Of a stretch of 64,000 nt of DNA, positions 835 through 17,585 are shown one piece after another. The stretch spans positions 1 to 64,000 of the IMG/VR virus record IMGVR_UViG_3300012988_000001, one strand, 5' to 3'. Numbering within the stretch: the stretch's first letter is position 1; each line of letters begins with the position of its first letter. Below the pieces are notes generated by a model. The model saw only the letters and a list, made by a program, of their open reading frames with translations, was not told the origin of the DNA and searched no databases. The position numbers were made by a program, and so were the translations under genes.

Positions 835-960
835 ACAAGGGGAGGCAATGCTTCCCCTGTTTATTTGTACAGTACTAAATCCTATAGACGGACTGCTGCA
901 CCCTATGGGTTAGCTTGTTTTCATGAGATACATAATACAGGATTTGATCAGTACTGTCAA
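835..960 (-). ncRNA. CCCACAGGGTGC-family non-coding element, copy A (putative ~90 nt sRNA)
   Basis: Minus-strand TTGACA(955-960) N17 TATTAT(932-937); core at 897-909 (CCCATAGGGTGCA variant); GC hairpin at 839-857; no ORF with an RBS. Confidence 0.6.
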
Positions 961-1132
961 CATCTTTTTCAAATGAATTTAAACGCTCTGTATCGCTCTA
1001 TAAGCCGTTCAACGAATAAGGCAAGCAAACATATTAGGGCAGTACTTTAAACGCGTTATAGGCTTGCTGGTGGCGTTATGCTTTAGTACTGAAATATAAG
1101 GAAAATGAAAAAAGATTGTCAATCTCTTAAAA

Positions 1133-1307
1133 AGTACTTGACGGATGATCGCAGTACTGGCATAATGTATCACATAGAGCGGCGGGACAGGTTAACTTCC
1201 CTAAGTAGACAGCCAGTAAGTCAGACGAAAATCTGGTGTCGCACTGAAAGAAAGATTGAAAAGAGTTTTAAAAAGTACTTGACAAGCTGGTGGGAAATTG
1301 AGATAAT
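1133..1307 (+). promoter_or_regulatory. Tandem sigma70-type promoters upstream of gene 1358
   Basis: TTGACG(1138) N17 CATAAT(1161) and TTGACA(1279) N17 GATAAT(1302); the second has a Chi site in its spacer. Confidence 0.8.
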
Positions 1308-1357
1308 GACCCCGTAGACAGCAAACAACCTAACTAAACCTTAAGAGGAAATATACA

Positions 1358-1954
1358 ATGACTACTACTAACAACGCAACCGAAGCACGTGTAACCCTGA
1401 AATCTGCTCTTGAAGCTGGCGACGTAAAAGGCTTGGGTGCAATCCTCGCTAAAATCGGTGGCGATAAAGACGGCGTATCAAAATTGGGCTTGACTTTCTC
1501 CCTCGCAGTAACGGCGGCGAAAGATGTACTCAAAGATCAGGCTAAACAGGCCGCCCTTAACGCAGAAGCCGCAGCGAAACGCCGCGAAGATAAAAAGGCA
1601 GCACGTCAGGCAGAGATCGAAGCACAGAACGCAGAGATCAAGGCAGAGAAAGAAAACATGATCAAGTTCCTCATGGACACCGTGAACGGCCTCGGCCTTG
1701 ACCTTGAAGCGGCAGAAGTAGCAGCACAGGCAGCCGTTGACAAAAAATACGGCGTAAGCGAAAAGGCTAAAAAGTACACCTTTACCCGCGTGGCAGTGGT
1801 TGTAGACGGTAAAGAATACGATATGCCAACGTCCGGTAACATGGTTCAAGTGCTTAAAGATGCCATGACCAAAGGCGGCTACGCAACACACAAAGACTTC
1901 ATTCTTGCACACGCTAAAAACGCAGAAGAAGCCGCAGCAGCTTTCGCTGAATAA
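1358..1954 (+). CDS. Ala/Lys-rich coiled-coil protein, probably highly expressed
   Basis: GAGGA RBS, two promoters, own terminator, AAA/GCA/GGC-biased codons. Confidence 0.85.
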   Translation: MTTTNNATEARVTLKSALEAGDVKGLGAILAKIGGDKDGVSKLGLTFSLAVTAAKDVLKDQAKQAALNAEAAAKRREDKKAARQAEIEAQNAEIKAEKENMIKFLMDTVNGLGLDLEAAEVAAQAAVDKKYGVSEKAKKYTFTRVAVVVDGKEYDMPTSGNMVQVLKDAMTKGGYATHKDFILAHAKNAEEAAAAFAE

Positions 1955-1971
1955 GTCAAGTAATTAAAACT

Positions 1972-2000
1972 AAAAGCCTCGCATAATGTGGGGCTTTTTT
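1972..2000 (+). terminator. Intrinsic terminator
   Basis: AAAAGCCTCGCA-TAA-TGTGGGGCTTTTTT. Confidence 0.8.
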
Positions 2001-2020
2001 TATTATAAAAGATTGTAGAA

Positions 2021-2100
2021 AGTACTTGCAATACTTTTCTAGTACTGTATAATGGTTTGCATAGGGGGAAACAACTTCCCCACTAATTAAGGAAAGAATC
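2021..2100 (+). repeat. Promoter-stem-loop-RBS cassette, copy 2
   Basis: AGTACTTGCAA...AGTACTGTATAAT, GGGGGAA/TTCCCC hairpin, TAAGGA. Confidence 0.85.
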
Positions 2101-2466
2101 ATGACACCTTTACAACTGATGGCTGACTCTTATATCACGGCGATGCATTGGGCTAGTACTGATGAAAATGGTGATCCACTCGACAACTACCCTACAGCAG
2201 CAGAGGCAAAAGATATTGCGGCAACTACCTGCAATAACTTCCTGAAAGTCCACGGTGATGATCTATCAATCGTAATGGGGTTACATCCTCATTATGGTTA
2301 TGAGCAAGCGGGGCATGATTTGTTTTTGACTCGCGAAGGTCATGGGGCTGGTTTCTGGGATCGTGATCTTGGTCACTATGGGGACGTGTTTACAAAGTAC
2401 TGTCAATCTATTGGTACGGCTGATCCGTATGTGGGCGATGATGGTTTTGTTTACGTTAATGTTTAA
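2101..2466 (+). CDS. Conserved phage protein (GHDxxLTRxGHGAGFWDR motif)
   Basis: AGHDLFLTREGHGAGFWDRD motif, recalled from phage hypothetical proteins; function unknown. Confidence 0.75.
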   Translation: MTPLQLMADSYITAMHWASTDENGDPLDNYPTAAEAKDIAATTCNNFLKVHGDDLSIVMGLHPHYGYEQAGHDLFLTREGHGAGFWDRDLGHYGDVFTKYCQSIGTADPYVGDDGFVYVNV

Positions 2467-2467
2467 A

Positions 2468-2548
2468 AGTACTTGCATTACTTCTTAAGTACTGTATAAT
2501 GATTTGCATAGGGGGAAACATCTTCCCCCATTAATTAAGGAAATGAAA
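2468..2548 (+). repeat. Promoter-stem-loop-RBS cassette, copy 3
   Basis: Same consensus as copy 2. Confidence 0.85.
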
Positions 2549-2767
2549 ATGGATCTGAATATCAAGATCAACCTCACAGTGAAACAAGTCAATGGTGATG
2601 AAGTTCTCCCACACCACGTAGACGGCCTGCGAGAAAATGCCATTGCTTATATTCTGGAAATGGTTAGCGATGATTGCCGTGAAGGGGAATTTAATGAAGT
2701 AATGGAAAACATCTGTGATGATGAAGAAACAGAATATCGCGGGTACTGGTCGGTTGTAGAGGAATAA
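2549..2767 (+). CDS. Acidic hypothetical protein; paralogue of 11064..11303
   Basis: Shared EVLxHH..L.E.A...I..M...GE...Y.G.WSV pattern; start moved to the RBS-supported ATG. Confidence 0.75.
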   Translation: MDLNIKINLTVKQVNGDEVLPHHVDGLRENAIAYILEMVSDDCREGEFNEVMENICDDEETEYRGYWSVVEE

Positions 2768-2769
2768 TC

Positions 2770-3030
2770 GTGGCTGTCGGATTTGCTAAAGACGGGGCAG
2801 AACAAAACGAGATTATAGCGGTCGTGGAGGCCGCTGTAAGCCACGCAAGGAATCAGCTAGGGGATAACACTACCCCATCGCTTACGCATTGCCTAGACTG
2901 TTCTAAGGCCATTCCTGAGCGTAGGCGTGAAGCTGTTAAGGGTTGCAAATATTGTATTGATTGTCAAGCTGAGTATGATACAATATTCAAACGCAATCCA
3001 CGTAACTGCTGGCACAGGAGTATGAGATGA
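2770..3030 (+). CDS. DksA/TraR-family C4 zinc-finger protein (YbiI-like)
   Basis: CLDCSKAIPERRREAVKGCKYCIDCQ; N-terminus MAVGFAKD resembles YbiI. Confidence 0.9.
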   Translation: MAVGFAKDGAEQNEIIAVVEAAVSHARNQLGDNTTPSLTHCLDCSKAIPERRREAVKGCKYCIDCQAEYDTIFKRNPRNCWHRSMR

Positions 3031-3124
3031 TCTTTAAGTATAACATGGGTTGCTGTTCGCGTCAAGGGTTTTATGCAGTATATTCTGACGGGGTAAACTA
3101 TCGTTATCGGTTTGTCAAGTACTT

Positions 3125-3246
3125 TATGTAGGGGAGAGATCCCCTGTTTATTTGTACAGTACTAAATCATAAGGACGGACTGCTGCACCCTGTGGGCCTG
3201 TTTTTGTCTATGCGTGTATTATGCCAGTACTCCACCAGCTTGTCAA
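3125..3246 (-). ncRNA. CCCACAGGGTGC element, copy B
   Basis: TTGACA(3241-3246) N17 CATAAT(3218-3223); core 3184-3196; hairpin 3131-3144. Confidence 0.6.
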
Positions 3247-3339
3247 CATCTTTTTTTCTGAATATTATTTGAAGAAAGTACTTGCATTACTTTTGCAGTA
3301 CTGTATAATACTTACATCAACCACAGAGAGGAAAGCAAA

Positions 3340-3561
3340 ATGACTAAGTACCTGATGGAAGTTTTTACTACTGAAAACGTAGCAACCAATGTAAAGCGTT
3401 ATTACAAGGTTGTTTGTGGTGTAGGCCGCAGAATCAGTAAGGCAGACTATCAGAAGCTGGAAGATAACGCGGAGGGGGCTTGCTGCTTTAGTACTGTAAA
3501 CACGAAAACCCATATTAAGCAATACAAAACTTTAGAGTTCTATACTGATTTAGTTTTGTAA
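3340..3561 (+). CDS. Hypothetical early protein
   Basis: Own promoter (3282-3309) and GAGGA RBS. Confidence 0.8.
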   Translation: MTKYLMEVFTTENVATNVKRYYKVVCGVGRRISKADYQKLEDNAEGACCFSTVNTKTHIKQYKTLEFYTDLVL

Positions 3562-3562
3562 A

Positions 3563-3642
3563 AGTACTTGCATTACTTCTTAAGTACTGTATAATGATTT
3601 GCATAGGGGGAACAACTTCCCCCACTAATTAAGGAAACGAAA
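3563..3642 (+). repeat. Promoter-stem-loop-RBS cassette, copy 4
   Basis: Promoter nearly identical to copy 3. Confidence 0.85.
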
Positions 3643-3867
3643 ATGGCACTTATCAAGATTATCGAATCAAACGTAGCAGGTCAAGAAAGCACTTTCATTG
3701 AATATGATACTGATTCGTTTGACGAACGTTATGCGGTGCAATACGGTGGATCTGGTATCACGTTCAATGGCACAAAGGAAGGTTGGAAATGTGCGGTTGA
3801 AGATTATTTGTCAAACGTTAAACACCAATTAGAAAGTGCCGCACAAGAAGGTGGCTACCTCGCATAA
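3643..3867 (+). CDS. Hypothetical early protein
   Basis: ORF behind cassette. Confidence 0.8.
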   Translation: MALIKIIESNVAGQESTFIEYDTDSFDERYAVQYGGSGITFNGTKEGWKCAVEDYLSNVKHQLESAAQEGGYLA

Positions 3868-3948
3868 AGTTTTACTCCAGTACTTGACATACTAATCGAG
3901 TACTGGCATAATGACTTTATCGAAACGAAACACTATTAAGGAATTATC

Positions 3949-4242
3949 ATGGCTAAGTATTGCAGAGAGTGCGGCGGGTTGTGTGTAGTAGATGATTTTG
4001 GTGTATCGAATCATATCTATGAAAACGGTGATATTCACCACGTGCTGGATGGTGATCATGTGGCTATCCCTGAGATGGAAGAAACATTGATCAATGAGGA
4101 AGTTTTCGACTTCTGCAAAGATCATTATGAATGTTTCAACGCATACCCTACTGAGTGCGAATTGTCAAACGGTGATGTTTATTCTTTTGCCGAAATGATG
4201 AAAGTACTTTCAGAGGAACAAAAGCAAGAAATTGAAAAATAG
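3949..4242 (+). CDS. Hypothetical protein with N-terminal CxxC
   Basis: CRECGG; own promoter TTGACA(3884) N17 CATAAT. Confidence 0.8.
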   Translation: MAKYCRECGGLCVVDDFGVSNHIYENGDIHHVLDGDHVAIPEMEETLINEEVFDFCKDHYECFNAYPTECELSNGDVYSFAEMMKVLSEEQKQEIEK

Positions 4243-4323
4243 TACTTGCATTACTTTCTGATTACTGTATAATGTTTTGCATAGGGGGAAACATCTTCCC
4301 CCATTAATTAAGAGAATAATATC
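4241..4323 (+). repeat. Promoter-stem-loop-RBS cassette, copy 5
   Basis: Consensus cassette. Confidence 0.85.
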
Positions 4324-4704
4324 ATGGCTAACCAAATCACTCCAGCACAGATCTTTAACAAGTACGAAATTCAGATTGTACTGGTAGAGTATGTTCCATC
4401 CTATGGATGGTCTGACGCTTGCGTAGCCGAAGATGTAGCCGATGCAAAGCGTATCATTAAAGAGTATGCCGCAGAAGGTATCAGCCTGAAAAGTGTTCGC
4501 CGCTGGGTGCTTAACAAAGATGCGTTTCTCTGTCAAGCCCTGTTGAACTTCTGCCGTGACTACTATCGCCGTACTGGTGGACTTTGGCCTAATGAGGTTG
4601 AAGTACTGAAAGCTAACGGGGTGAAGAAATTCACCTTGACTTTGAAAGAAATCGAAGAAGTACTGGGTAATGATTGCCGTTTAGTTACTTCTCAGGCAGT
4701 ATAA
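4324..4704 (+). CDS. Hypothetical early protein
   Basis: ORF behind cassette. Confidence 0.8.
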   Translation: MANQITPAQIFNKYEIQIVLVEYVPSYGWSDACVAEDVADAKRIIKEYAAEGISLKSVRRWVLNKDAFLCQALLNFCRDYYRRTGGLWPNEVEVLKANGVKKFTLTLKEIEEVLGNDCRLVTSQAV

Positions 4705-4769
4705 AAAGTACTTGACACTATACGGGGATATGATATTATATCCCCATCTTAAGCAAAGAAGGTAATACA

Positions 4770-4961
4770 ATGTCTAGAATCTCAAACGCCGCCTTAGATG
4801 CTTTCGCACTGAAAGTAATGGCTGTTAGTACTAACAAGTCATGGGGTACTGATCAGTTTAAACGTCTGGTAATTTGTGCGGGTAACGGCATGACTGTAGA
4901 AGAAACCGCCAAAGAAATCGATGCAATGACTATTGACAAAGATCAGGATAATGGACTATAA
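4770..4961 (+). CDS. Hypothetical early protein
   Basis: Own promoter (TTGACA at 4712) and GAAGG RBS. Confidence 0.75.
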   Translation: MSRISNAALDAFALKVMAVSTNKSWGTDQFKRLVICAGNGMTVEETAKEIDAMTIDKDQDNGL

Positions 4962-5142
4962 TAAGGTTAACAAGCGAGTACTGGAGTTATCAAGGAAAGC
5001 ACGTAAAGAGTACACCTTAGATCGTTCAATTAGCAACTATCATTTAATGCAAGGTGATAAGTTTATTGTTATTGACGAACCGCTGGAAGTAGTGTATATT
5101 GTAGTTAATGCGATGATTCGCGACAAAACGAGGATTAAGTAA
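4933..5142 (+). CDS. Hypothetical protein
   Basis: Overlapping operon ORF. Confidence 0.6.
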   Translation: MTKIRIMDYNKVNKRVLELSRKARKEYTLDRSISNYHLMQGDKFIVIDEPLEVVYIVVNAMIRDKTRIK

Positions 5143-5390
5143 TGCGTACTATCTTTGACCTGCAAGACAAAGGAACTATGGCACGTAGATCAATGGTTAC
5201 TGTAGGCGGGAAACAACACTGGAGCGGTTATGTATGCTTCATTGTTGGCGGGAAAATGTATGAGCGGGTAGTATACCACAAAGAGCTTAATTACATTCTT
5301 TTCCGTAAAGAAGTGATCGCTATCGAACCAGAAGCCCTCAAACCGATTGCAGGGGCTTGGAATAAAGAATCGCTGAATGTATCAGCTTAG
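5142..5390 (+). CDS. Hypothetical protein
   Basis: TAATG coupling; hairpin at 5399-5417 follows. Confidence 0.7.
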   Translation: MRTIFDLQDKGTMARRSMVTVGGKQHWSGYVCFIVGGKMYERVVYHKELNYILFRKEVIAIEPEALKPIAGAWNKESLNVSA

Positions 5391-5440
5391 TTAATTAAAG
5401 GCCGCACAGAGCGGCCTATCGCTCATATGGGGGTATTATA

Positions 5441-5584
5441 ATGAATCCACGCAACATATTAATCAAACCACCAGCAACAAAGGCAGAACGGGCAGAACGC
5501 CGACGCAACCGCATGAAGTCACTTGTAAAGGCTGGCTATTCACGTTCACACGCTTTCAAACTTGCAAAGGAAGAAATAAAATGA
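5441..5584 (+). CDS. Small basic protein (47 aa, not in ORF track)
   Basis: GGGGG RBS; hand translation MNPRNILIKPPATKAERAERRRNRMK... Confidence 0.55.
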   Translation: MNPRNILIKPPATKAERAERRRNRMKSLVKAGYSRSHAFKLAKEEIK

Positions 5585-5704
5585 AACTTTGTCAAGTACT
5601 GGACGAGATTGAAAATATTGTTGACAGAAAACAACAATATGATACACTGTTATCAAGAAGTCAGGCAAATGAAGTTGAAAGGCAACGGATAGAAGGGGCA
5701 GAAT

Positions 5705-6007
5705 GTGAATCGTTATACGCAACCGCAGCACAGGGGAATAAGTACAGCAGCACAACGTCGCAAGCCAGCAAAGACTAAACACAGAAAGTACTTAAGAGAA
5801 CCCGTTCCCGTAGATACTAGCTGGCTGATGGATTATGACGTACAGCATATGTATTTGAATGGGGGATGGTCATTTGGTAACGGTATGATCTGGGGTAGTA
5901 CTGGCAGTGGTAAGAGTAATATCGGTGCAATGTATTTTAGTAAATTGAATGGCTGGACTTCTGCCGCCCCGAAAAAAGATTTTGAATCCCCGTTCAAAAA
6001 GGCTTGA
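5705..6007 (+). CDS. Hypothetical protein
   Basis: GTG start; start uncertain; overlaps ORF 5581..5778. Confidence 0.4.
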   Translation: MNRYTQPQHRGISTAAQRRKPAKTKHRKYLREPVPVDTSWLMDYDVQHMYLNGGWSFGNGMIWGSTGSGKSNIGAMYFSKLNGWTSAAPKKDFESPFKKA

Positions 6008-6072
6008 CACAATACCGGCTTAGTGAGATAATACTTACAAGCCGGAACAAAGGCACATACCCACAGGGTGCG
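6004..6072 (+). ncRNA. CCCACAGGGTGC element, copy C
   Basis: TTGACA(6004) N17 GATAAT(6027); core 6060-6071; converges on copy D. Confidence 0.55.
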
Positions 6073-6109
6073 GAAAAGTATTCAGTACTTGAGAATGATA
6101 ATCATTTAC

Positions 6110-6188
6110 ATCAACAGACGGATTCCTGCACCCTGTGGGCTAGTTGTTTTCATGGCTTTATCATGCCAGTACTGGATAGGTTTGTCAA
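6110..6188 (-). ncRNA. CCCACAGGGTGC element, copy D
   Basis: TTGACA(6183-6188) N17 CATGAT; core 6127-6139 followed by TCCGTCTG. Confidence 0.55.
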
Positions 6189-6220
6189 CTACTTTTTAAT
6201 GAAAAGAATTTGAAAATAAT

Positions 6221-6298
6221 GCTTGCAGTACTTTTAAATTAGCGTATAATGTTTTGCATAGGGAGAGATAATCTTTCCCACTAATTAAGGAAATGAAA
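6221..6298 (+). repeat. Promoter-stem-loop-RBS cassette, copy 6
   Basis: TTGCAG..TATAAT; hairpin variant GGGAGA/TTTCCC. Confidence 0.8.
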
Positions 6299-6664
6299 AT
6301 GGAACGTATCGTTTATGGTCGTGGTGCAAGTGCTGAAGTTGTTCCTGTAGAACTGCTGGCGATGTTAACCGAAATGATTCGCCGTAGTGATATTAGTTTT
6401 CCTCCGTCCGTAATGCCGTATGCTATCAGCTACGAAGTACGCAAGACTCCTAAGTACTGGAAGATTGACCGTGTAGAACTGGATAAAGATACAGGAGAAA
6501 TCCGTCAATATGGGCGTAGCTCTGCTGGTGCTGTAGACTTTGACGGAAACGTGTTTAAGTCTGCTAGTTATAACGCGGTGGCTAAAGGTATTCGCGGGAA
6601 TATCTTTGTTAATAACGGATTTAATGCAATTACTGGTGATGGTTATATCCGTTATTTAAATTAA
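6299..6664 (+). CDS. Conserved phage protein (GNVFKSASYNAVAKGIRGNI motif)
   Basis: Motif resembles a widespread phage hypothetical family (G.v.K.AS..A.AK..R.N); function unknown. Confidence 0.75.
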   Translation: MERIVYGRGASAEVVPVELLAMLTEMIRRSDISFPPSVMPYAISYEVRKTPKYWKIDRVELDKDTGEIRQYGRSSAGAVDFDGNVFKSASYNAVAKGIRGNIFVNNGFNAITGDGYIRYLN

Positions 6665-6667
6665 GAA

Positions 6668-6750
6668 AGTACTTGCAAAGTAATCAAAACAGCGTATAAT
6701 GTTTTGCATAGGGGGAGATAAACTCCCCCACTATTAAGAGAAGAAATATC
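6668..6750 (+). repeat. Promoter-stem-loop-RBS cassette, copy 7
   Basis: Consensus cassette. Confidence 0.85.
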
Positions 6751-6990
6751 ATGGCACAGAAAATCACTCGCACCGAAGTTAATCATTATCTGGCAGTACT
6801 GAATGGTGTATTGGCAGCGATGGGTGCAAAGTATCGTTATAAATTGCAACCTGTTGCTGGTGGTTATACACTGGAGAAGTACAATACAGAGGGCGATCTG
6901 GTCGATACTTGTATTGGTGGTCAATCTTTACGTGCAGTATATGAGATCATTCGTTTTTCTGCAAACATGATCGGGGATAACGTGAAGTAA
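6751..6990 (+). CDS. Hypothetical early protein
   Basis: ORF behind cassette. Confidence 0.8.
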   Translation: MAQKITRTEVNHYLAVLNGVLAAMGAKYRYKLQPVAGGYTLEKYNTEGDLVDTCIGGQSLRAVYEIIRFSANMIGDNVK

Positions 6991-7038
6991 TTATTATCAA
7001 AAGTACTCTTGACAATACTTTGAGAGTACTTTATAATA
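6987..7038 (+). repeat. 52-bp promoter block identical to 10981-11032
   Basis: GTAATTATTATCAAAAGTACTCTTGACAATACTTTGAGAGTACTTTATAATA occurs at both sites. Confidence 0.85.
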
Positions 7039-7069
7039 CTTACATCACTTAAGCAAAGAGAGAAACAAA

Positions 7070-7378: not shown

Positions 7379-7390
7379 TTACTTTCAAAA

Positions 7391-7911: not shown

Positions 7912-8015
7912 GGGTTGACTTCGGTTAGCCCTTTTGCTATTATATAGTCATTGGCAGATAAGCTACTAACCCACAGGGTGCAATAGTCTGTCTGTTAAAA
8001 AGATATTAGTACTTT
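7912..8015 (+). ncRNA. Terminator/promoter hybrid plus CCCACAGGGTGC element, copy E
   Basis: GGGTTGAC-TTCG-GTTAGCCC-TTTT; TTGACT N17 TATTAT; core 7970-7982; 45 nt identical to copy H. Confidence 0.6.
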
Positions 8016-9947: not shown

Positions 9948-10070
9948 GAAAGGGGGCAGATAGCCCCCTGTTTATTTGTACAGTACTAAAACCTATAGAT
10001 ACATTTGTGCACCCTGTGGGCTAGTGTTCTCTATGGGATACATTATGCCAAAATGCTGGTGGCTTGTCAA
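9948..10070 (-). ncRNA. CCCACAGGGTGC element, copy F
   Basis: TTGACA(10065-10070) N17 CATAAT(10042-10047); core 10008-10020; hairpin 9951-9969. Confidence 0.6.
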
Positions 10071-10984: not shown

Positions 10985-11063
10985 TTATTATCAAAAGTAC
11001 TCTTGACAATACTTTGAGAGTACTTTATAATAATCACATCACTTAAGCAAAGAGGCAAGACAA

Positions 11064-11303: not shown

Positions 11304-11453
11304 ATGAAAAAAGAATTCATTCTACGCGTACAAATGAAATCAGGGGGAACCCGCACATTTCGCGAATGGGGATGGTCGGCGGGTGATGCATACCAGACTT
11401 TAAAAAAGAATAACCCCGATGTACAGTACAAGATAGAAGGAAAGGCGGCGTAA
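11304..11453 (+). CDS. Small hypothetical protein (49 aa)
   Basis: TAAATG junction; hand translation MKKEFILRVQMKSGG... Confidence 0.55.
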   Translation: MKKEFILRVQMKSGGTRTFREWGWSAGDAYQTLKKNNPDVQYKIEGKAA

Positions 11454-11546
11454 TTATTATCAAAAGTACTTGTATTACTGGAGCGAGTACTTTATAATAC
11501 TTACATCAACTAAGCAATAACGCTTAATTAAACCGAGGACAGGAAA

Positions 11547-11684
11547 ATGAAAGAATCTCAATACGAAGCAGTACTGGCACAGACTGGTGAAGACCTGACG
11601 CCTGAGCAGTACGCGAAAATTGAGGAACTGCTGCTGGCTGGTAAGTCGGTTAAAGACACTGTGAAAGCCGTCCGTAAAATGTAA
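11547..11684 (+). CDS. Small hypothetical protein (45 aa)
   Basis: Own promoter (~11465-11497), AGGA RBS. Confidence 0.6.
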   Translation: MKESQYEAVLAQTGEDLTPEQYAKIEELLLAGKSVKDTVKAVRKM

Positions 11685-11892
11685 TAAAGGGGCGTACAAT
11701 GATTAAACCAATAGATCCTATTGTACGCCTTTATTACAACACGTACAAACCATCAGATCTCAAAAGGCTGGTGGAGGAAAGAAAAGAAGTACAAAAAGAT
11801 TTAAAAAGTACTTGCAATAAAATCGATATCAAAGTATAATGTTTACATCAGCTAGGGAATGGTCCACTAGCTAACTAACAGGAAATAAAATC

Positions 11893-12258
11893 ATGGCTAT
11901 CATCTCCGCTTTCTTCTCTTCTCGTAAACTGGCTCGTGATGCTAAAGTTGATCTGGGTGGTAAGATTGTTGATAATGGTACAACCGCACCAGCGGGACAG
12001 CGTTGGGAACTCCAGTACGAAGCAGCCCCGAAATCAGCAGCCATCGCAGAACTGGCGGCGATCATGGAAGCTGAAGTAGTGGACATGAAACTTGAAGAGG
12101 TTAAACCTCGTGATCTGATGGGCTTGCCACGCCCTGTAAGTAAACACCAAACGGCTCGCGAATATGTACTCAAGGATCGCAAAAACAATCCGGTACGCGT
12201 ACAGGTTCGCCGCAGTAAAACCAATGCCCTGTTAGCCGCTCACATGGCGAAAGCATAA
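11893..12258 (+). CDS. Hypothetical early protein
   Basis: Own promoter TTGCAA N17 TATAAT, AGGA RBS, host-like codons. Confidence 0.85.
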   Translation: MAIISAFFSSRKLARDAKVDLGGKIVDNGTTAPAGQRWELQYEAAPKSAAIAELAAIMEAEVVDMKLEEVKPRDLMGLPRPVSKHQTAREYVLKDRKNNPVRVQVRRSKTNALLAAHMAKA

Positions 12259-12304
12259 CCGAACATGGGGGAGAACTTTCTCCCCCTCTTTTAAGAGAAA
12301 GAAC

Positions 12305-12556
12305 ATGAAAAAGAAAGTACAGTTAGTTAACGGTAGTTTCATGCGATTGCATTATAAACCCATTCAAAGAGTCATTGATCGAGGTGTAGAAGTAGCTAAT
12401 AAGTATGTACTAGGAGAGATCCGACCTCGCAAACTTAATAACGGAAAGTTTGAAGTACTGGAAGTTTCACGCACAGAACGTATTGTAATTGACAAAGACA
12501 AAAACATCCACTTTCTGAGCCACGAAAAGTACAATGATTTCATCGAAAAATATTGA
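12305..12556 (+). CDS. Hypothetical protein
   Basis: Preceded by a promoterless hairpin-RBS half-cassette (GGGGGAGAA/TTCTCCCCC). Confidence 0.75.
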   Translation: MKKKVQLVNGSFMRLHYKPIQRVIDRGVEVANKYVLGEIRPRKLNNGKFEVLEVSRTERIVIDKDKNIHFLSHEKYNDFIEKY

Positions 12557-12563
12557 TAAAAAA

Positions 12564-12645
12564 GGGTTGACTTCGGTTGGCCCTTTTGCTATTATATACG
12601 CATAGAAACAAACTAGCCCACAGGGTGCATAAATACGTCTATAAT
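12564..12645 (+). promoter_or_regulatory. Terminator/promoter hybrid plus CCCACAGGGTGC element, copy G (leader of gene 12666)
   Basis: TTGACT(12567) N17 TATTAT(12590); core 12617-12629. Confidence 0.65.
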
Positions 12646-12665
12646 TTACCGAAAGGAGAAACCAT

Positions 12666-13202
12666 ATGCCCGGACAATTCCGATCAAAAGCAGGTGCTAC
12701 GCTCGCAGGTCATAGCGACAAGTGGAGCGACGAGAACCGCAGAACAAACAGCCACAACGCAGGACAGGGTTCACGAGGTTCCCGCAACCAAGGCACTGGT
12801 GCACAAGGCAAAGCAAACACCGTAGCATCACAAGGTATCGACACATCCAGAATGAAACCAGAAGAGAAGCTACGCTATTTTAATTCTCTTGGATTACTTG
12901 GGAACAAACCAGAACCAGAAATCGAAGTAGAGCCACCAAAACACCACCAGCAAGCACCAGTAGACAGCAAGACACTAATCAGTAACCTACGCGAACAATG
13001 GTCCGAGATCTTCGGAGAGAACGCAGGACTGATGAAAGGCATCATTAACACAATGAAGCAAGTCCCACCAGCTAAGTTTAAGAAAGCAGCACAGGCAGCA
13101 TATAGAGCCACCGCAGAGATCACAGCAAAGACTGATGATATCTATGATATACAAGAATACATCCAGAACGCAATCAATGAGATTGCCTATCAAGATCTAT
13201 AA
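12666..13202 (+). CDS. Hypothetical protein with disordered G/N/Q-rich N-terminus; T-poor coding strand
   Basis: AGGAG RBS; only 2-6 T per 60 nt in several lines. Confidence 0.8.
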   Translation: MPGQFRSKAGATLAGHSDKWSDENRRTNSHNAGQGSRGSRNQGTGAQGKANTVASQGIDTSRMKPEEKLRYFNSLGLLGNKPEPEIEVEPPKHHQQAPVDSKTLISNLREQWSEIFGENAGLMKGIINTMKQVPPAKFKKAAQAAYRATAEITAKTDDIYDIQEYIQNAINEIAYQDL

Positions 13203-13269
13203 AAAATAAAGGGTTGACTTCGGTTAGCCCTTTTGTTATTCTATCAGTACAACAACAGAGGACAACACA

Positions 13270-13551
13270 ATGAAACATATACTCACCATTCTCGCAGTAC
13301 TGGCATCATTCAACGCAGCAGCCACGACACCACCGCATGAAGTTAGATGTACGTCCTCCGGTATTCCTAGCATCATTGTATTAGCTGATGGTGTACTGAT
13401 GGATGATATGGAGCGTCTTATTGCAACAGAGATTCACACTGGAATCTTTGAATCTATTGACGAATACGGCAAAGTAACATATACTATTCATGGTAACAAT
13501 ATTATCATGAAAGGAAACGGATTCACTAAAGAGTATGTCTGTGATCTATAA
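13270..13551 (+). CDS. Putative exported protein
   Basis: Signal-peptide-like MKHILTILAVLASFNAAA. Confidence 0.7.
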   Translation: MKHILTILAVLASFNAAATTPPHEVRCTSSGIPSIIVLADGVLMDDMERLIATEIHTGIFESIDEYGKVTYTIHGNNIIMKGNGFTKEYVCDL

Positions 13552-13726
13552 AATTGTACTCAAAGGCTTAATGCCCGGTAGCGAAGTCTGGGAACAGCAC
13601 ACAGCATTCATCTCATCACAACCCGGTGATGACATAGATGGCATGATACTTGCACACATCTATGAATGGCGTAGCAAAGCAGGATACTACAAAGTGAAAT
13701 ATATGTCAAAAGAGGTAATCCAATGA
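13535..13726 (+). CDS. Hypothetical protein
   Basis: Operon ORF. Confidence 0.55.
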   Translation: MSVIYKIVLKGLMPGSEVWEQHTAFISSQPGDDIDGMILAHIYEWRSKAGYYKVKYMSKEVIQ

Positions 13727-13751
13727 GATAACTTTACAGAGGATTATCTTA

Positions 13752-13967
13752 ATGCCAACTCATTCTATTATTTTAAATGGTAAACGTTTCAAGATGACTG
13801 AGGGAGTTTTACAAAGTACTAACACACAATTGATCCTTGACAAATTGACTAAGGATGAATGTGATGCTATACTACGTGAAGCAAATAAAATTAAATCCAC
13901 CGTAGCAGCACATCCGGTCAAACGTCAACTGTTACAGGGAATTATTATGGGGTGTTTGCGTAAATGA
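13752..13967 (+). CDS. Hypothetical protein
   Basis: GAGGA RBS. Confidence 0.65.
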   Translation: MPTHSIILNGKRFKMTEGVLQSTNTQLILDKLTKDECDAILREANKIKSTVAAHPVKRQLLQGIIMGCLRK

Positions 13968-14142
13968 TTTATCAAGAGATTGTCAAGCGATTAAAAGAGC
14001 TTGACTTTGGTAATGCAATACGTTATGCTAGTGCAAATGCATTCGAACTGCAAGCACTGCACGATCAAGGTCATAGCATTGAGTCGCTGGTGGAGATCTG
14101 TTTAAACCATAAATAACCTTGTAACCTTACAAGGAGTATAAC

Positions 14143-14412
14143 ATGGTTAAAACAGATTTAAACACGGTCCAATCATGGCACAAAGTCCAGTTAGACCAAC
14201 TGCCCCAACTTTTAAAAGATCAAGGGTTCCAATATGTAAAAGCATTCAGTACTGATGAACATAGAATCTTTGTATCACAGGATGGTAACTACAAATTGAT
14301 TATACATAAAAACGTAGGGAAACTATATCCTACTAAAAATAATCAGTGCTTGCACACATTTGCAATTGTTGCACCAATGCCAAAATTAAATGACGTTAAA
14401 AGGGTTGACTAA
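14143..14412 (+). CDS. Hypothetical protein
   Basis: AAGGAG RBS. Confidence 0.75.
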   Translation: MVKTDLNTVQSWHKVQLDQLPQLLKDQGFQYVKAFSTDEHRIFVSQDGNYKLIIHKNVGKLYPTKNNQCLHTFAIVAPMPKLNDVKRVD

Positions 14413-14461
14413 GGTCGGCCCTTTTGCTATTATAACTACATCGAAACGAAGGAGTTAAATC

Positions 14462-15052
14462 ATGTACGTCACTAAAGCAGCCAAAGCACATCTTAAAGCA
14501 CTGGACCTGTTACCTACTAATAACCAAATGCTTAAGTACTGTAGAGAGAATCTTACTCGTTTGGGTAAAGGTTCTAGTCGTGAAGTGTTTGCACTCTCCG
14601 ATACGCTGGTGGTCAAGGTGGCACTGGGCGGCGTAGGTGTGAAGCAGAACGAGAATGAGATCCGAGTGTGGAATCTCGTCAGCTATGACTACATCGGAAT
14701 GAAACGTTCCTTTGCTAAAGTACTGGTAAATGAAGGACACTGGAAGGACTTCTATATTGTAATGGAACGTCTGGAAACTAACACAGTGTCACGCAGCATC
14801 TTTAATACTAAAACAGTGCAGCAATGGCGTACTGATCGCAAAGCAATGCATCCTACTGCCAAGCGTATTTTTAAAGATGTACAAGACACCGACGACAACG
14901 CGTTTACCAATAACATTGCAGACATTACGCCTCGCAATATGGGAACATCAAAATCAGGTGTTGTCAAGATGCTTGACTATGGTTTTAGTACTCCCATATG
15001 GAATGGTATCGCGAAAGGCAAACTAAAAAATCGCGAATTACTTATTCGTTAG
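14462..15052 (+). CDS. Protein-kinase-like (Ser/Thr kinase fold) protein
   Basis: LGKGSSREVF Gly loop, VVKVA Lys, NENE Glu, VMERL hinge, DITPRNMG catalytic loop, LDYG (DFG-like). Confidence 0.75.
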   Translation: MYVTKAAKAHLKALDLLPTNNQMLKYCRENLTRLGKGSSREVFALSDTLVVKVALGGVGVKQNENEIRVWNLVSYDYIGMKRSFAKVLVNEGHWKDFYIVMERLETNTVSRSIFNTKTVQQWRTDRKAMHPTAKRIFKDVQDTDDNAFTNNIADITPRNMGTSKSGVVKMLDYGFSTPIWNGIAKGKLKNRELLIR

Positions 15053-15113
15053 TACTTGACAGATAATAGCTGGTGGGATATAATTATCCCATCAACTACA
15101 GAGGAAAGCAATC

Positions 15114-15335
15114 ATGGGATTCAAAGTTCGCCAGTGGTCAACAACAAACGCTCGCCCATTCGATGTAGTGTACGAAGACCACGCACTAAACAACGTACAC
15201 TATCAGCCAAACGTAGAGTTTAGTACTCCAGAACTGGCAGAGCATCACATGCAATCACTGGTTAAAAACTTCACAGATGATAGTCTATCATTCATTCGTG
15301 ATCACTGGCCTACCGATGGTGCAGTAACAGAATAA
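15114..15335 (+). CDS. Hypothetical early protein
   Basis: Own promoter with a Chi site in the spacer; GAGGA RBS. Confidence 0.75.
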   Translation: MGFKVRQWSTTNARPFDVVYEDHALNNVHYQPNVEFSTPELAEHHMQSLVKNFTDDSLSFIRDHWPTDGAVTE

Positions 15336-15661
15336 CAAAAGAAAGGGTTGACTTCGGTCGGCCCTTTTGTTATTATATCAGTACATCCAAAGGGGGACAT
15401 ATGAAATATATTTTGATGGTAGGTATGATGATTTTATATCAACGCCAAACAGCATTCCCATTGCTGGGAATTATTGCAATTCTTACTGGTTTATTGATTT
15501 GGAGATGGTAACATGGCTAAGGTCACGATTGAAACAGTAAAAGAAACCATTAAGTTAATGGATGAATTGAACGGCACGGATCATTATAATACTATTGATT
15601 GGGATAATCCCAGTACTGAATTACCTGCTTTCTTAACTGATAAGAAAGATGATAAAAAGGA

Positions 15662-15760
15662 TTGACACATAACTGCCAATGAGATATTATATAGTCATTG
15701 GCAGATAAGCTACTAACCCACAGGGTGCAGTAGTCCGTCTATAGTTTGAGTACTTACAAT
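15662..15760 (+). ncRNA. CCCACAGGGTGC element, copy H
   Basis: TTGACA(15662) N17 TATTAT(15685); core 15717-15729 then TCCGTCTATAG. Confidence 0.6.
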
Positions 15761-16153
15761 ATTGTAAATGATCTTGACCGCCGAGGCAATTTGATCAATA
15801 ATTGATCAAGAAATTTTAGAGTACTGGATTATGGTTGAAATTATGAAACAATATGGTAATGTATTACTGAAAACGGAGAACGACTATTATGTAGTAAGAT
15901 CGGGCCGCGAAAGTATTCAAACACAAAACGCTTTCCATGCTCTGGTATGGTATGCAAAATTTATCATGAAGGAAAACAAATGAGAATACCTGCTCTTATC
16001 CTTCTAGTACTCGTCGTGCTGTATGTAGCTAATGCTATACAGGATGAAAGCAGTATTCAGTACTGGAATGAAATGAAATATTATTGGAATAAGTCTTGAC
16101 ATAGCTGGTGGACTATCCTATAATATATACATCTTAACAAAGAGGATTACCAA

Positions 16154-16333
16154 ATGGTACACGTAGATCTGGAAGTACAAAAGAAAGTCTGGTACGATAT
16201 CGGCCTGAAAGGTATTAACTGGTCTGACGCTCAATACGCTGCACTCAAAGCACTTGACCGTTATCAACGTGAACAAGTACTTGAGGCACACAAGAAAGGT
16301 GTGAATGACCGCATCGATCTTGAAGTACTGTAA
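16154..16333 (+). CDS. Small hypothetical protein (59 aa)
   Basis: Own promoter with Chi in the spacer, GAGGA RBS, terminator at 16341-16378. Confidence 0.7.
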   Translation: MVHVDLEVQKKVWYDIGLKGINWSDAQYAALKALDRYQREQVLEAHKKGVNDRIDLEVL

Positions 16334-16450
16334 ATCCTAAAAGGCCAATAACACATTGGCCTTTTTTTCGTTTATACACTAAATCAATTACGATTTCAAG
16401 AAATTTTAGAAAGTACTTTAAATCGAAAATAGTTTATATAAATTTCAGAA

Positions 16451-16536
16451 AGTACTTGCAATCAATATTAGAAAGCGTATAATGTATTACATCGAGAGGG
16501 GAAATGGTTCTACTCTCAAACGTTAAGGAAATGATT
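16451..16536 (+). repeat. Promoter-stem-loop-RBS cassette, copy 12
   Basis: GAGAGGGGAA..TTCTACTCTC variant. Confidence 0.8.
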
Positions 16537-17067
16537 ATGTACTCTTCAGTTCAAACTATGGTTAACGTCAACGCTGCTACTGGTATCGCTTATGGTTACA
16601 TCAACGCTAACAATGTAAACGGTGATGTACTGCATGATATCTTCTGCAATGGCATCGATTCACGCAGATTAGAATGTGATATCGAGTTTGCTTCAAAACA
16701 TGGTTTCGTTACTCCTGAGCAGGAAGAGAATGAATTATTCAGTACTTACCTCGCTCGCATTCAAGATGTAATGCTTGACTTCCTTAACAATCTGCAAGAT
16801 GAGGAAGGTAATGATCTCACAGAACTGGTGGAAGAACATGATCGCCAGTACGAAGAGTTTACAGGTGATATCCACGTAGCAACAATCGATGACACTACTG
16901 TTATCTATAACACTGACAGTAATACTATCTGCGTGATGGATAGCAAAACTGTAGGGAAGTACTTCTTATGCTCCCCTTGCTGCCCTAACGCTGGTGATTT
17001 GGATAGTGCTGGTGGCGATGTAGAAACTTACGATGTACCAGCTAGCTGGCGTGAAATGGACTACTAA
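16537..17067 (+). CDS. Acidic conserved phage protein (C-terminal CSPCCPNAGDLD)
   Basis: ORF behind cassette. Confidence 0.8.
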   Translation: MYSSVQTMVNVNAATGIAYGYINANNVNGDVLHDIFCNGIDSRRLECDIEFASKHGFVTPEQEENELFSTYLARIQDVMLDFLNNLQDEEGNDLTELVEEHDRQYEEFTGDIHVATIDDTTVIYNTDSNTICVMDSKTVGKYFLCSPCCPNAGDLDSAGGDVETYDVPASWREMDY

Positions 17068-17103
17068 TATAGCGAATGAGCGATGATATGTCAAGTCTAA
17101 AAA

Positions 17104-17186
17104 AGTACTTGCAATCATCGCTCAGTACTGTATAATGATTTGCATAGGGAGAGAATAGTTTTCTCCCAATAGTAAGGAATACTGTT
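17104..17186 (+). repeat. Promoter-stem-loop-RBS cassette, copy 13
   Basis: GGGAGAGAA-tagtt-TTCTCCC variant. Confidence 0.85.
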
Positions 17187-17471
17187 ATGTTTAACGGTCA
17201 TATTGCAAACTTCGCATTACGTCGCGGTGTAGAGATTCAAGTAGTCGAAGCAAATGAAATCGACAATGAATACAATGAATTGTGGTTCTACGCCGCAGAC
17301 AATGACTGTGAGCCAGAAATGATGTACATCCAAAACAATGATGGTACTTTATCATTCAAAGGTAAGTTAAACAAATCACTTGAAGATCTGCCAGCGTGGA
17401 TCGATAGCAAAGATAAACTGAAAAAAGTTATCTGCTATCTGTCAGATATGCTCGCTGCCGAAGCAATGTAA
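17187..17471 (+). CDS. Hypothetical early protein
   Basis: ORF behind cassette. Confidence 0.8.
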   Translation: MFNGHIANFALRRGVEIQVVEANEIDNEYNELWFYAADNDCEPEMMYIQNNDGTLSFKGKLNKSLEDLPAWIDSKDKLKKVICYLSDMLAAEAM

Positions 17472-17483
17472 TCTTTACAAAAC

Positions 17484-17585
17484 AGTACTGGACATAACAA
17501 GCCAGTACTGTTAATATGTAGTCATTGGCAGATAAGCCGTAGCCCACAGGGTGCAGAGATCCGTCTATAGCTTTTAAGTACTAAT
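17484..17585 (+). ncRNA. CCCACAGGGTGC element, copy I
   Basis: TGGACA(17489) N17 TAATAT; core 17543-17555 then TCCGTCTATAG. Confidence 0.55.

What the first reader, a model, noticed from the sequence alone, without database searches (positions are those of the whole stretch)
835..17585. Nine dispersed, individually promoted non-coding elements with core CCCACAGGGTGC
Seen: copies A(-, core 897), B(-, 3184), C(+, 6060), D(-, 6127), E(+, 7970), F(-, 10008), G(+, 12617), H(+, 15717) and I(+, 17543). Each lies about 20-35 nt downstream of its own TTGAC-N17 promoter. The consensus is [AG]CCCACAGGGTGCA-N4/5-TCCGTCT[AG]T, usually followed by AGTACT. The base before the core is A or G opposite the U of GGGU, which fits an RNA mini-hairpin (A-U or G-U pair). 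A, B and F share TTTAGTACTGTACAAATAAACAGGGG, end in a GC hairpin after about 90 nt, and are the clearest minus-strand transcription units seen in the window. Only G leads directly into an RBS-ORF. Inference: a multicopy early sRNA family. Possible roles are a decoy or sponge for a host RNA-binding or defence protein, a put/nut-like antitermination element, or promoter-primed R-loop origins.
Basis: partly seen in the sequence, partly recalled or inferred. Interest (0 to 1): 0.86.

Follow-up and report, generated by a model that had tools for sequence, protein, structure and literature searches.

The report
Jumbo-phage early promoter-coupled structured RNA family
Nine strong host-type promoters at one end of this giant phage genome each start a conserved, folded stretch of about 50 bases of non-coding RNA that is shared by a whole group of giant enterobacterial phages, matches no catalogued RNA family, and has no known job.

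Summary
The core occurs nine times (expected 0.04), only at 898-17554, and each copy lies 20-28 nt after a sigma-70-type promoter. The window is the start of a 366-kb RaK2-like jumbo phage contig. The same element occurs about 9-14 times in each relative for which a whole early region was read, and only within the roughly 20-kb terminal repeat where that is annotated (108 copies collected).

It has a hairpin P1 starting at +3/+4, with a variable stem and a purine-rich loop. P1 comes in 44 stem/loop variants, including at least 15 unrelated 4-bp stems, which is clear compensatory covariation. A near-invariant mini-hairpin P2 (R-CCC-AYA-GGG-U) follows, then GC and a fixed-spacing tail. So it most likely acts as a folded single strand, most simply RNA.

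About 37% of copies point against an all-plus-strand gene array. At least half end within about 100 nt, at a bidirectional terminator or against a facing copy. Only 4 of 108 lead straight into an ORF, and genes have their own promoters.

Best reading: a multicopy immediate-early non-coding RNA module that binds a conserved partner. Function is untested. There is no Rfam match, no boxA and no literature description.

The parts
882..925 (-). Element A. Probable start at 925, no P1 stem, P2 core at 898-909 (CCCAUAGGGUGC), tail to 882. The whole RNA probably runs from 925 to about 830.
932..960 (-). Promoter of A (TTGACA-17-TATTAT, A-rich upstream)
838..858 (.). Bidirectional terminator hairpin. 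It ends the upstream plus-strand gene and RNA A.
3169..3211 (-). Element B (no P1 stem; core 3185-3196). Its promoter is at 3218-3246 and its terminator hairpin at 3128-3147.
6039..6087 (+). Element C (P1 GCC/GGC; core 6060-6071; divergent tail). Its promoter is at 6004-6032. It faces D.
6112..6153 (-). Element D (no P1 stem; core 6128-6139). Its promoter is at 6160-6188. It converges on C; the two cores form a 17-nt inverted repeat, 88% complementary, with 46 nt between the arms.
7950..7997 (+). Element E (P1 UGGC/GCUA; core 7970-7981). Its promoter at 7915-7943 has its -35 inside terminator hairpin 7908-7935. A second promoter and then ORF 8095 follow.
9993..10035 (-). Element F (no P1 stem; core 10009-10020). 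Its promoter is at 10042-10070 and its bidirectional terminator at 9951-9969.
12602..12644 (+). Element G (no P1 stem; core 12617-12628). Its promoter at 12567-12595 lies inside terminator hairpin 12560-12587. It leads directly to an RBS and ORF 12666-13202.
15697..15744 (+). Element H (P1 UGGC/GCUA; core 15717-15728). Its promoter is at 15662-15690.
17524..17570 (+). Element I (P1 UGGC/GCCG; core 17543-17554). Its promoter is at about 17489-17517 (TGGACA-17-TAATAT). A second promoter follows, with its -10 at 17635.

Best explanation
The nine copies belong to a conserved family of promoter-coupled, structured, non-coding RNA modules. The modules sit in the long terminal repeat (early region) of RaK2-like jumbo phages.

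Inferred, not shown: host sigma-70 RNA polymerase starts at the A seven bases after the -10 hexamer.

The RNA opens with three parts:
- P1, a 5'-terminal hairpin starting at +3/+4. Its stem sequence is free to vary and its loop is purine-rich (G[C/A]GAAA, AGAUAA or GAACAA).
- P2, an almost invariant mini-hairpin, R-CCC-AYA-GGG-U.
- GC plus a tail at fixed distance, RRARNU-N-Y-R-U-C-Y-A-U.

In at least half the copies the transcript should stop after about 90-115 nt. It stops either at a bidirectional terminator shared with the upstream gene or at the long hairpin formed with a facing copy. In those copies the RNA itself, not a downstream gene, is the product.

My reading is that P1 shields the 5' end from 5'-end-dependent decay. 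This rests on the established behaviour of 5'-terminal stem-loops in E. coli. P2 plus tail would be a sequence-specific recognition surface for one conserved partner, either a protein or the polymerase itself. About 10-14 strong promoters per repeat would then flood the cell with this RNA in the first minutes of infection, to titrate or recruit that partner.

Shown here: the repeat family, its promoter linkage, the P1 covariation, the clade-wide conservation and the orientation and termination statistics. Inferred: that transcription occurs, the 5' protection, the existence of a partner and the trans action.
For: - Nine copies against 0.04 expected. The model finds only these in the window.
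- 108 copies were collected in RaK2, 121Q, GAP32, CBB, fENko-Kae01, fHe-Yen9-04 and metagenomic relatives.
- Where termini are annotated, all copies lie inside the terminal repeat: Kae01 1-19736 and CBB 1-22456.
- In the window's own contig, whole-contig pattern scans hit only 1-22.5 kb and 361.7-366.2 kb.
- P1: all 4 model pairs show changes on both sides. The covariation score is 0.34 against 0.14 in shuffles (0 of 500 as high) and 0.01-0.08 when the partner is slid. The four P1 pairs are among the five highest mutual-information column pairs. There are 44 distinct P1 variants with at least 3 pairs.
- P2: 99% paired. The loop varies in sequence and in length (3-4 nt). Two copies in different phages carry CCU...AGG. 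The closing pair is A-U or G-U.
- Promoter at a fixed distance in 104 of 108 copies.
- 23 of 63 copies are antisense to an all-plus-strand gene array. 39 of 108 sit in convergent pairs, 16 of 108 have a terminator within 150 nt, and 4 of 108 have an RBS-ATG within 70 nt.
- C and D run-through RNAs fold at -44 and -42 kcal/mol, z -4.4 and -4.8.
- Genes have their own second class of promoter with its own 5' hairpin: 12 copies.
- A distant relative, PA5oct, makes abundant non-coding RNAs from its terminal repeat, by RNA-seq (PMC7318152).
Against: - There are no expression data for any RaK2-like phage in the searched library, so no start site or RNA end has been observed.
- Single-copy folds are mostly no better than shuffles.
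- About a fifth of copies (23 of 108, including A, B, D, F and G here) form at most one of the four P1 pairs, so 5' protection by P1 cannot be universal.
- In convergent pairs the core would end up buried in a long duplex.
- Plus-strand copies E, H and I have no clear terminator and should read into genes.
- No partner protein was identified. The terminal-repeat ORFs tested gave no informative family.
- P2 and the tail vary almost only by transitions. That is also what a double-stranded DNA site would show.
Confidence: 0.45

Rival explanations
1. A cis-acting signal that acts on the polymerase transcribing it. It could be a put-like RNA, or a hairpin-stabilised promoter-proximal pause or factor-loading site. 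Either would change elongation, termination or roadblock behaviour of early transcription complexes.
For: - The element always sits at a fixed short distance from the start site.
- It has two hairpins like put.
- There are no insertions or deletions between P2 and the tail in 108 copies.
- The tail has an invariant pyrimidine then purine at columns 64 and 65, ten bases after an invariant G, with the 3' end of P2 at -11. This geometry resembles the consensus elemental pause (G-10, Y-1, G+1) plus a pause hairpin; that comparison rests on my own knowledge.
- Strict conservation across phages of different host genera would fit a slowly evolving host partner such as RNA polymerase.
- Terminator-promoter fusions separate many early genes.
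Against: - 37% of copies face away from all genes. Many copies are followed within 40-60 nt by their own terminator or a facing copy, which is odd for an antiterminator.
- The base at +1 of the putative pause is G in only 39 of 108 copies.
- The pause fit is post hoc.
- boxA is absent.
- A -10-like hexamer in the tail is not conserved: 38 of 108.
Confidence: 0.2
2. A leader tag on immediate-early messages. P1 would stabilise the message, and P2 plus tail would be the target of a later phage factor (nuclease or repressor) that shuts off only the transcripts made from the first promoter class. Minus-strand copies would be by-products or antisense regulators.
For: - E and I have tandem promoters: a distal one with the element and a proximal one without it.
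- G fuses the element to an RBS.
- 5'-terminal hairpins are a general feature of this region's transcripts, seen in both promoter classes.
Against: Only 4 of 108 copies lead directly into an ORF. More than half end early or are antisense. No candidate factor was found.
Confidence: 0.12
3. A PeSL-like regulatory cassette. The sequence would be kept mainly as a shared promoter/terminator module and as recombination homology for shuffling early genes, with no dedicated RNA function for the core.
For: - The promoters of E and G are embedded in terminator hairpins (AAAGGG...CCCTTT), like the PeSL stem-loops described for T4-type phages.
- Copies are shuffled relative to genes between phages.
- In antisense, the A-rich leader plus P2 gives a hairpin followed by a U-rich run.
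Against: - PeSLs as described run from the promoter straight to the Shine-Dalgarno and start codon.
- Homology for recombination does not explain compensatory changes in P1. It also does not explain an invariant 12-mer across genera whose genomes share under 30% nucleotide identity (ANI about 23-29% in the table of PMC13070987).
- Other PeSL-type promoters in the window (13208, 14405, 15348) lack the element.
Confidence: 0.1
4. A double-stranded DNA operator downstream of the start site. A phage or host protein would bind it to block or tune these promoters.
For: P2 is an inverted repeat. The core and tail are conserved as sequence, with only transition-type variation. The position at +16 to +50 suits a roadblock.
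Against: - P1 covaries, which means it folds as a single strand.
- The P2 centre varies in length from 3 to 4 nt.
- The P2 closing pair is G-U in about 40% of copies, and G-U pairs recur in P1; these would be A-C mismatches on the other strand.
- Orientation relative to the promoter is invariant.
Confidence: 0.08
5. Promoter-primed R-loop replication or recombination start sites in the terminal repeat.
For: The elements are confined to the terminal repeat. They have strong promoters in both directions, including convergent pairs.
Against: Ten to fourteen copies per repeat is many for origins. Selection for an RNA hairpin at the very 5' end is not what a persistent RNA-DNA hybrid needs. No G-rich run was evident in the leaders read; strand composition was not measured.
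Confidence: 0.05

Closest known systems
Lambda-type nut sites (boxA plus the boxB hairpin bound by N)
   Same: A short leader signal after early promoters. It has a small hairpin with a variable stem and a purine-rich, GNRA-like loop (P1 loops such as GAGAAA and GCGAAA resemble boxB loops) next to a conserved linear segment.
   Different: There is no boxA and the order is reversed (hairpin first). There are 10-14 copies per repeat rather than two. 37% of copies are antisense to all genes and many are followed at once by their own terminator. No conserved N-like protein was found: one Arg-rich 47-aa ORF exists but has no homologue.
HK022 put RNA
   Same: Two adjacent stem-loops transcribed just downstream of early promoters. 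put needs no phage protein and acts on host polymerase. The strict conservation seen here would fit a host partner.
   Different: The element is about 50 nt and I recall put as about 70 nt, though no put sequence or model was available to compare. One hairpin here is only 4 bp with a 3-nt loop. Copy number and antisense orientation differ.
PeSL cassettes (promoter-early stem-loops) of T4-type phages (PMC4122927, PMC2839356)
   Same: Repeated composite terminator/promoter modules in the plastic early regions of T4-related phages. The E and G promoters sit inside AAAGGG...CCCTTT hairpins.
   Different: PeSLs are described as promoter, then Shine-Dalgarno, then start codon. The P1-P2-tail module is not part of that description, and most copies here have no ORF.
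5'-terminal stabiliser hairpins (for example the ompA 5' UTR)
   Same: P1 begins 2-3 nt from the probable 5' end. The second promoter class in this region also starts with a strong hairpin.
   Different: Stabilisers need no conserved sequence, whereas P2 and the tail here are nearly invariant. About a fifth of copies lack P1.
Lambda OOP RNA and other short antisense RNAs
   Same: A, B and F are RNAs of about 91-95 nt, made against the flow of genes and ending at a terminator shared with the upstream gene.
   Different: The overlap with the sense message is only the terminator hairpin. The conserved part is the 5' domain, which has no complementary target in the window.
Non-coding RNAs ncRNA001 and ncRNA002 from the terminal repeat of Pseudomonas phage PA5oct
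   Same: They are abundant non-coding transcripts from the long terminal repeat of a related jumbo phage that uses host polymerase.
   Different: The model finds no match in the PA5oct repeat (best E 0.28). The PA5oct RNAs are longer (236 and 451 nt).

Membership tests
Lambda-type nut site | A boxA sequence (consensus TGCTCTTTAACAA or CGCTCTTA) next to the hairpin | tested here: not met
   32 matches with up to 3 mismatches in the window against 31.07 expected, and none beside an element.
Lambda-type nut site | A boxB-type hairpin: short stem free to vary, with a GNRA-like purine loop | tested here: inconclusive
   P1 has 4-5 bp covarying stems and loops G[C/A]GAAA, AGAUAA or GAACAA. The loops are 6-7 nt, not 5, and 23 of 108 copies form at most one P1 pair.
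Lambda-type nut site | A cognate N-like protein with an arginine-rich motif | tested here: inconclusive
   One 47-aa ORF (5441-5584) has an Arg-rich stretch but no tblastn match in 50,697 phage records. Only plus-strand ORFs of the window were scanned.
Lambda-type nut site | Placed so that downstream genes are reached by reading through terminators | tested here: not met
   23 of 63 copies are antisense to all genes. 55 of 108 meet a terminator or a facing copy within 150 nt, with no gene beyond on that strand for the minus-strand copies.
HK022 put RNA | Two stem-loops in the nascent RNA supported by covariation | tested here: inconclusive
   P1 covaries strongly. P2 is 99% paired but nearly invariant, with two double changes. 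No put sequence or model was available for comparison.
HK022 put RNA | Acts in cis on host polymerase to suppress termination without phage proteins | not testable with these tools
   This needs in vitro transcription or reporter assays.
PeSL cassette (T4-type phages) | A stem-loop terminator fused to a sigma-70-type early promoter | tested here: met
   This holds for E (7908-7943) and G (12560-12595). It does not hold for A, B, C, D, F, H and I.
PeSL cassette (T4-type phages) | Promoter followed directly by a Shine-Dalgarno sequence and start codon | tested here: not met
   Only G in the window, and 4 of 108 copies overall.
Any Rfam 15 family | Score at or above the family's gathering threshold | tested here: not met
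   There are no matches in 64 kb at gathering thresholds. At E up to 5 over 1-18500, one weak sub-threshold match touches the upstream edge of element B, and it is mostly on B's promoter: Hammerhead_HH9, 3213-3289(-), 17.9 bits against a gathering score of 52, E = 4. Nothing else overlaps an element.
Terminated small RNA gene | Own promoter and own intrinsic terminator with no ORF between them | tested here: met
   A, B and F: promoter, about 91-95 nt, then a G+C hairpin and a U-rich run. For C and D, termination is inferred from the 17-bp core/anti-core hairpin followed by a U-rich run. It is not met for E, H and I.
Type III toxin-antitoxin antitoxin RNA | A tandem array of repeats next to a toxin gene | tested here: not met
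   The copies are dispersed, at least 1.8 kb apart except the facing pair C/D. Each has its own promoter.

The most novel reading that the evidence does not exclude
The module is a new kind of promoter-coupled RNA that works on conserved host machinery in the first minutes of infection. One possibility is a factor-independent RNA that reprograms or parks the host polymerase that makes it. This would be put-like or pause-like, used in both orientations as an insulator between early units. The other possibility is a massively expressed decoy that titrates a host RNA-binding regulator, nuclease or defence sensor shared by Enterobacterales.
Probability: 0.2. Interest if true: 0.8.

Novelty: new variant of a known kind. 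Interest (0 to 1): 0.62.

Why it matters
RaK2-like jumbo phages (RaK2, K64-1, 121Q, PBECO4, GAP32, CBB and many therapeutic candidates against E. coli, Klebsiella and Salmonella) have terminal repeats of about 20 kb filled with unknown early genes. I found no transcript map for them in the searched literature. This element gives that region its first conserved, structure-supported RNA feature. It has about 10-14 copies per repeat and 108 examples with clear compensatory changes, and it is absent from Rfam. It therefore offers a concrete handle on how these phages organise the first minutes of infection with host polymerase. It also shows that many of the strongest early promoters there probably do not serve genes at all. 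If the partner turns out to be host polymerase, a nuclease or a defence protein, it would be a new example of RNA-based takeover.

Tried and rejected
1. A closing helix between the 5' end (AUAGA) and the tail (UCUAU), seen by eye and in the fold of G. It has no mutual-information support and competes with P1.
2. A pseudoknot between the P1 loop and the tail: no covariation.
3. An alternative helix GGGUG with the tail YRYYY. It is 88.6% paired against 35-64% when the partner is slid. But the changes are one-sided transitions only, and it is unstable (+0.6 kcal/mol) in the CCGUCU variants that dominate this window. I kept it as a possibility only.
4. Mimicry of a host sequence: no blastn match in 5,426 E. 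coli genomes at E up to 10. At most 7 nt are complementary to one rRNA operon, which is chance level.
5. Presence in PA5oct: absent.
6. A leaderless or mini-ORF in the leader (AUG AAA ACA...): the AUG is not conserved between copies.
7. A sigma-dependent pause from a -10-like hexamer in the tail: the key bases are present in only 38 of 108 copies.
8. Protein clues from ten terminal-repeat ORFs: Pfam gave nothing above threshold, and PHROGs gave only families of unknown function plus one virion-protein family.
9. Literature: the CBB, fEgEco12, PeSL and PA5oct papers and a search for the core string give no description of the element.

Full report
**1. Is it there?**

The 12-mer CCCACAGGGTGC, allowing one mismatch, occurs nine times in the 64-kb window, all between 898 and 17554. 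Dinucleotide-preserving shuffles give 0.04. Copy A reads CCCATAGGGTGC.

Every copy lies on the same strand as, and 20-28 nt downstream of, a promoter. The promoter has an A-rich stretch, then TTGACA or TTGACT (TGGACA in I), a 17-nt spacer and a TATAAT-like hexamer.

A covariance model built from 71 copies finds exactly these nine in the window (E 4e-15 to 3e-9) and nothing else.
- A, B and F share a spacer and end in G+C hairpins that read as terminators on both strands (838-858, 3128-3147, 9951-9969).
- Only G runs straight into an RBS and ATG, at 12666.

**2. Where is the window?**

The window equals bases 1-64000 of a 366,160-bp IMG/VR contig. Its nearest database relatives are RaK2-like jumbo phages: Klebsiella phage fENko-Kae01, the Salmonella phages Munch, SE_PL and 7t3, and more distantly 121Q, PBECO4, RaK2, GAP32 and CBB.

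A 61-nt query from copy H finds the element in 55 jumbo-phage records of this group, usually several times per record.

Where genome ends have been determined, all copies lie inside the long direct terminal repeat. That repeat is 1-19736 in Kae01 and 1-22456 in CBB, and CBB carries the copies in both repeats.

In the window's own contig, two whole-contig pattern scans hit only 1-22.5 kb and 361.7-366.2 kb. The far end of the contig holds a further convergent pair (L041). The genome therefore has at least 11 copies spread over about 19 kb that runs across the contig ends. By analogy this stretch is its terminal repeat; that is an inference.

The Pseudomonas relative PA5oct lacks the element.

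**3. Anatomy**

I collected 108 copies from 17 sources.
- 104 of them have a promoter match of at least 9 of 12 at the fixed distance.
- Positions 6-7 after the -10 hexamer are C-A in 80 and 87 copies, so the probable start is that A.

All four modelled pairs change on both sides.
- The covariation score is 0.34, against 0.14 in shuffles (0 of 500 as high) and 0.01-0.08 when the partner is slid.
- The four P1 pairs are among the five highest mutual-information column pairs in the whole alignment.
- There are 44 distinct variants with at least three pairs. They include unrelated stems such as UGGC/GCCG, GGAG/CUCC, UCCA/UGGA, ACCG/CGGU, CAAA/UUUG and AGUC/GACU.
- The loops are G[C/A]GAAA, AGAUAA or GAACAA.

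P1 starts at +3/+4. 77 of 108 copies form at least three P1 pairs, and 23 form none or one. The second group includes A, B, D, F and G here, whose leader is just A-rich.

- It is 99% paired.
- Its loop varies in sequence and in length (3-4 nt).
- Two copies in different phages carry CCU...AGG.
- The closing pair is A-U or G-U.

After P2 come GC and a tail with no insertions or deletions in 108 copies. The tail reads RRARNU-N-Y-R-U-C-Y-A-U, and two of its positions are an invariant pyrimidine and an invariant purine.

The G-U pairs, the compensatory changes and the loop-length variation point to a folded single strand of the sense sequence. The simplest form of that is the RNA.

Single-copy folding energies are unremarkable except for E, so the case rests on comparison between copies.

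**4. Context**

All called genes in this region are on the plus strand. Yet 23 of 63 copies in the six sources with known gene direction point the other way.

Across all 108 copies:
- 39 face another copy within 150 nt.
- 16 meet an intrinsic terminator.
- 18 meet a second promoter first.
- 4 reach an RBS-ATG within 70 nt.

A, B and F should give RNAs of about 91-95 nt.

C and D are a facing pair whose cores form a 17-nt inverted repeat. A transcript running through the partner folds at -44 or -42 kcal/mol (z -4.4 and -4.8). Its stem is followed by a U-rich run, which is the antisense of the partner's A-rich leader. That looks like a shared bidirectional stop. Such facing pairs recur in every relative.

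E, H and I have no clear terminator.

The genes have their own promoters. A second family, TATAAT-GNTTTGCAT-AGGGGG, occurs 12 times, all on the plus strand, at 326-17655 (expected 0.05). Each copy starts a stable 5' hairpin followed by a conserved Shine-Dalgarno region. So most units of the first promoter class plus the element are extra, non-coding units.

**5. What it most likely is**

I read it as a multicopy non-coding RNA module. I call it immediate-early because its promoters are sigma-70-type and it sits in the terminal repeat.

P1 fits the known protective effect of a stem-loop within a few bases of the 5' end in E. coli. This rests on established knowledge and was not tested here. It is echoed by the 5' hairpins of the second promoter class.

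P2 plus the tail is kept almost letter for letter in 108 copies, in phages of Escherichia, Klebsiella, Salmonella, Cronobacter, Pectobacterium, Erwinia and Yersinia. That is what a sequence-specific binding surface for one conserved partner would look like.

Many copies cannot serve a gene. I therefore favour the RNA itself as the product (trans-acting binder, decoy or cofactor), at 0.45.

The main rival is a cis signal acting on the transcribing polymerase, put-like or a hairpin-stabilised pause (0.2). The geometry fits loosely: the 3' end of P2 at -11, an invariant G at -10, and an invariant Y then R at -1/+1. But G at +1 is present in only 39 of 108 copies, and the fit is post hoc.

The other rivals are:
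- a tag on first-wave messages for later shut-off (0.12);
- a PeSL-like cassette with no dedicated RNA role (0.1);
- a double-stranded DNA operator (0.08);
- an R-loop origin (0.05).

**6. Comparison with known systems**

- Rfam 15 gives no family match at gathering thresholds. At E up to 5, only a weak sub-threshold match (17.9 bits against 52) touches the edge of element B.
- The nut comparison fails on boxA, on orientation and on the immediate terminators.
- The put comparison is architectural only.
- PeSL cassettes of T4-type phages explain the terminator-embedded promoters of E and G, but not the leader.
- The CBB paper lists RpoD-like promoters with UP elements and does not mention the element.
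- A full-text search for the core string finds nothing relevant.
- I found no transcript map for any RaK2-like phage in the searched library.
- PA5oct RNA-seq shows that abundant non-coding RNAs from a terminal repeat exist in a related phage.

**7. Verdict**

This is an undescribed RNA family of a familiar general kind. Interest is moderate to high (0.62). The decisive data are early-infection 5' and 3' end mapping, in vitro transcription of wild-type and compensatory mutants, and RNA pull-downs.

Noticed in passing
window 1-64000; densest at 1-18400: The palindrome AGTACT occurs 211 times against about 18 expected, with 98 copies in the first 18.5 kb. Nine pairs are spaced exactly 20 bp apart. 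Many copies overlap the -35 (AAAAGTAC-TTGACA or TTGCAA) or sit just before an extended -10. One peak lies 30-34 nt after the element core start, in 32 of 108 copies. It is enriched 11-22 fold in all RaK2-like early regions but not in PA5oct. Part of this may be the UP-element consensus. The 113 copies outside the repeat are unexplained.
   Followed up: partly
window 326-17655, 12 sites (for example 2048-2068, 3590-3610, 6695-6715): A second repeated regulatory family: TATAAT-GNTTTGCAT-AGGGGG, with 12 copies against 0.05 expected, all on the plus strand. The probable start is the A of GCAT. A very stable 5'-terminal hairpin follows (GGGGGAA...UUCCCCC), then CTAATTAAGGAAA and a gene. The exact leader string also occurs in L001, L016, L023 and L044.
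   Followed up: partly
window 7908-7943, 12560-12595, 13208-13233, 15341-15376: Terminator-promoter fusions. The -35 hexamer TTGACT lies inside a hairpin AAAGGGTTGACTTCGGTYRGCCCTTT with a UUCG loop, and the U-run leads into the -10. They resemble the PeSL cassettes of T4-type phages.
   Followed up: partly
window 6091-6109; L041 between its two elements (about 3100-3140): Between the facing elements C and D lies GAGAATGATAATCATTTAC. By my count it matches 16 of 19 positions of the E. coli Fur-box consensus as I recall it, including the central 13. A similar AATGA-N3-TCATT palindrome sits in the facing pairs of L001, L016, L017, L023 and L025, but not in those of CBB or GAP32.
   Followed up: partly
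window, whole: Several 6-bp palindromes are completely absent although 5-17 copies are expected: AAGCTT 0 against 16.7, CCATGG 0 against 9.4, CAGCTG 0 against 9.0, CGATCG 0 against 6.8. This looks like restriction-site avoidance.
   Followed up: no
window 5441-5584 (+): A 47-aa ORF with an arginine-rich stretch (TKAERAERRRNR) reminiscent of N-protein RNA-binding motifs. It follows a small hairpin and a G-rich RBS. It has no tblastn match in the phage collection.
   Followed up: partly
window 12666-13202 (+): The only ORF fused directly to an element (G). It matches a PHROG annotated as virion structural protein (phrog_16530, E 2e-61). The similarly placed genes in Kae01 and CBB are annotated as detected in virions or as structural protein. 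This is an early-promoter gene in the terminal repeat whose product is packaged.
   Followed up: no
L041 (contig 361698-366160) and window 1-18400: The contig starts inside the early region, and the element-bearing stretch runs across the contig ends. AGTACT density and the elements both stop near 18.4 kb, the likely inner edge of the terminal repeat by analogy with Kae01 (19.7 kb).
   Followed up: partly
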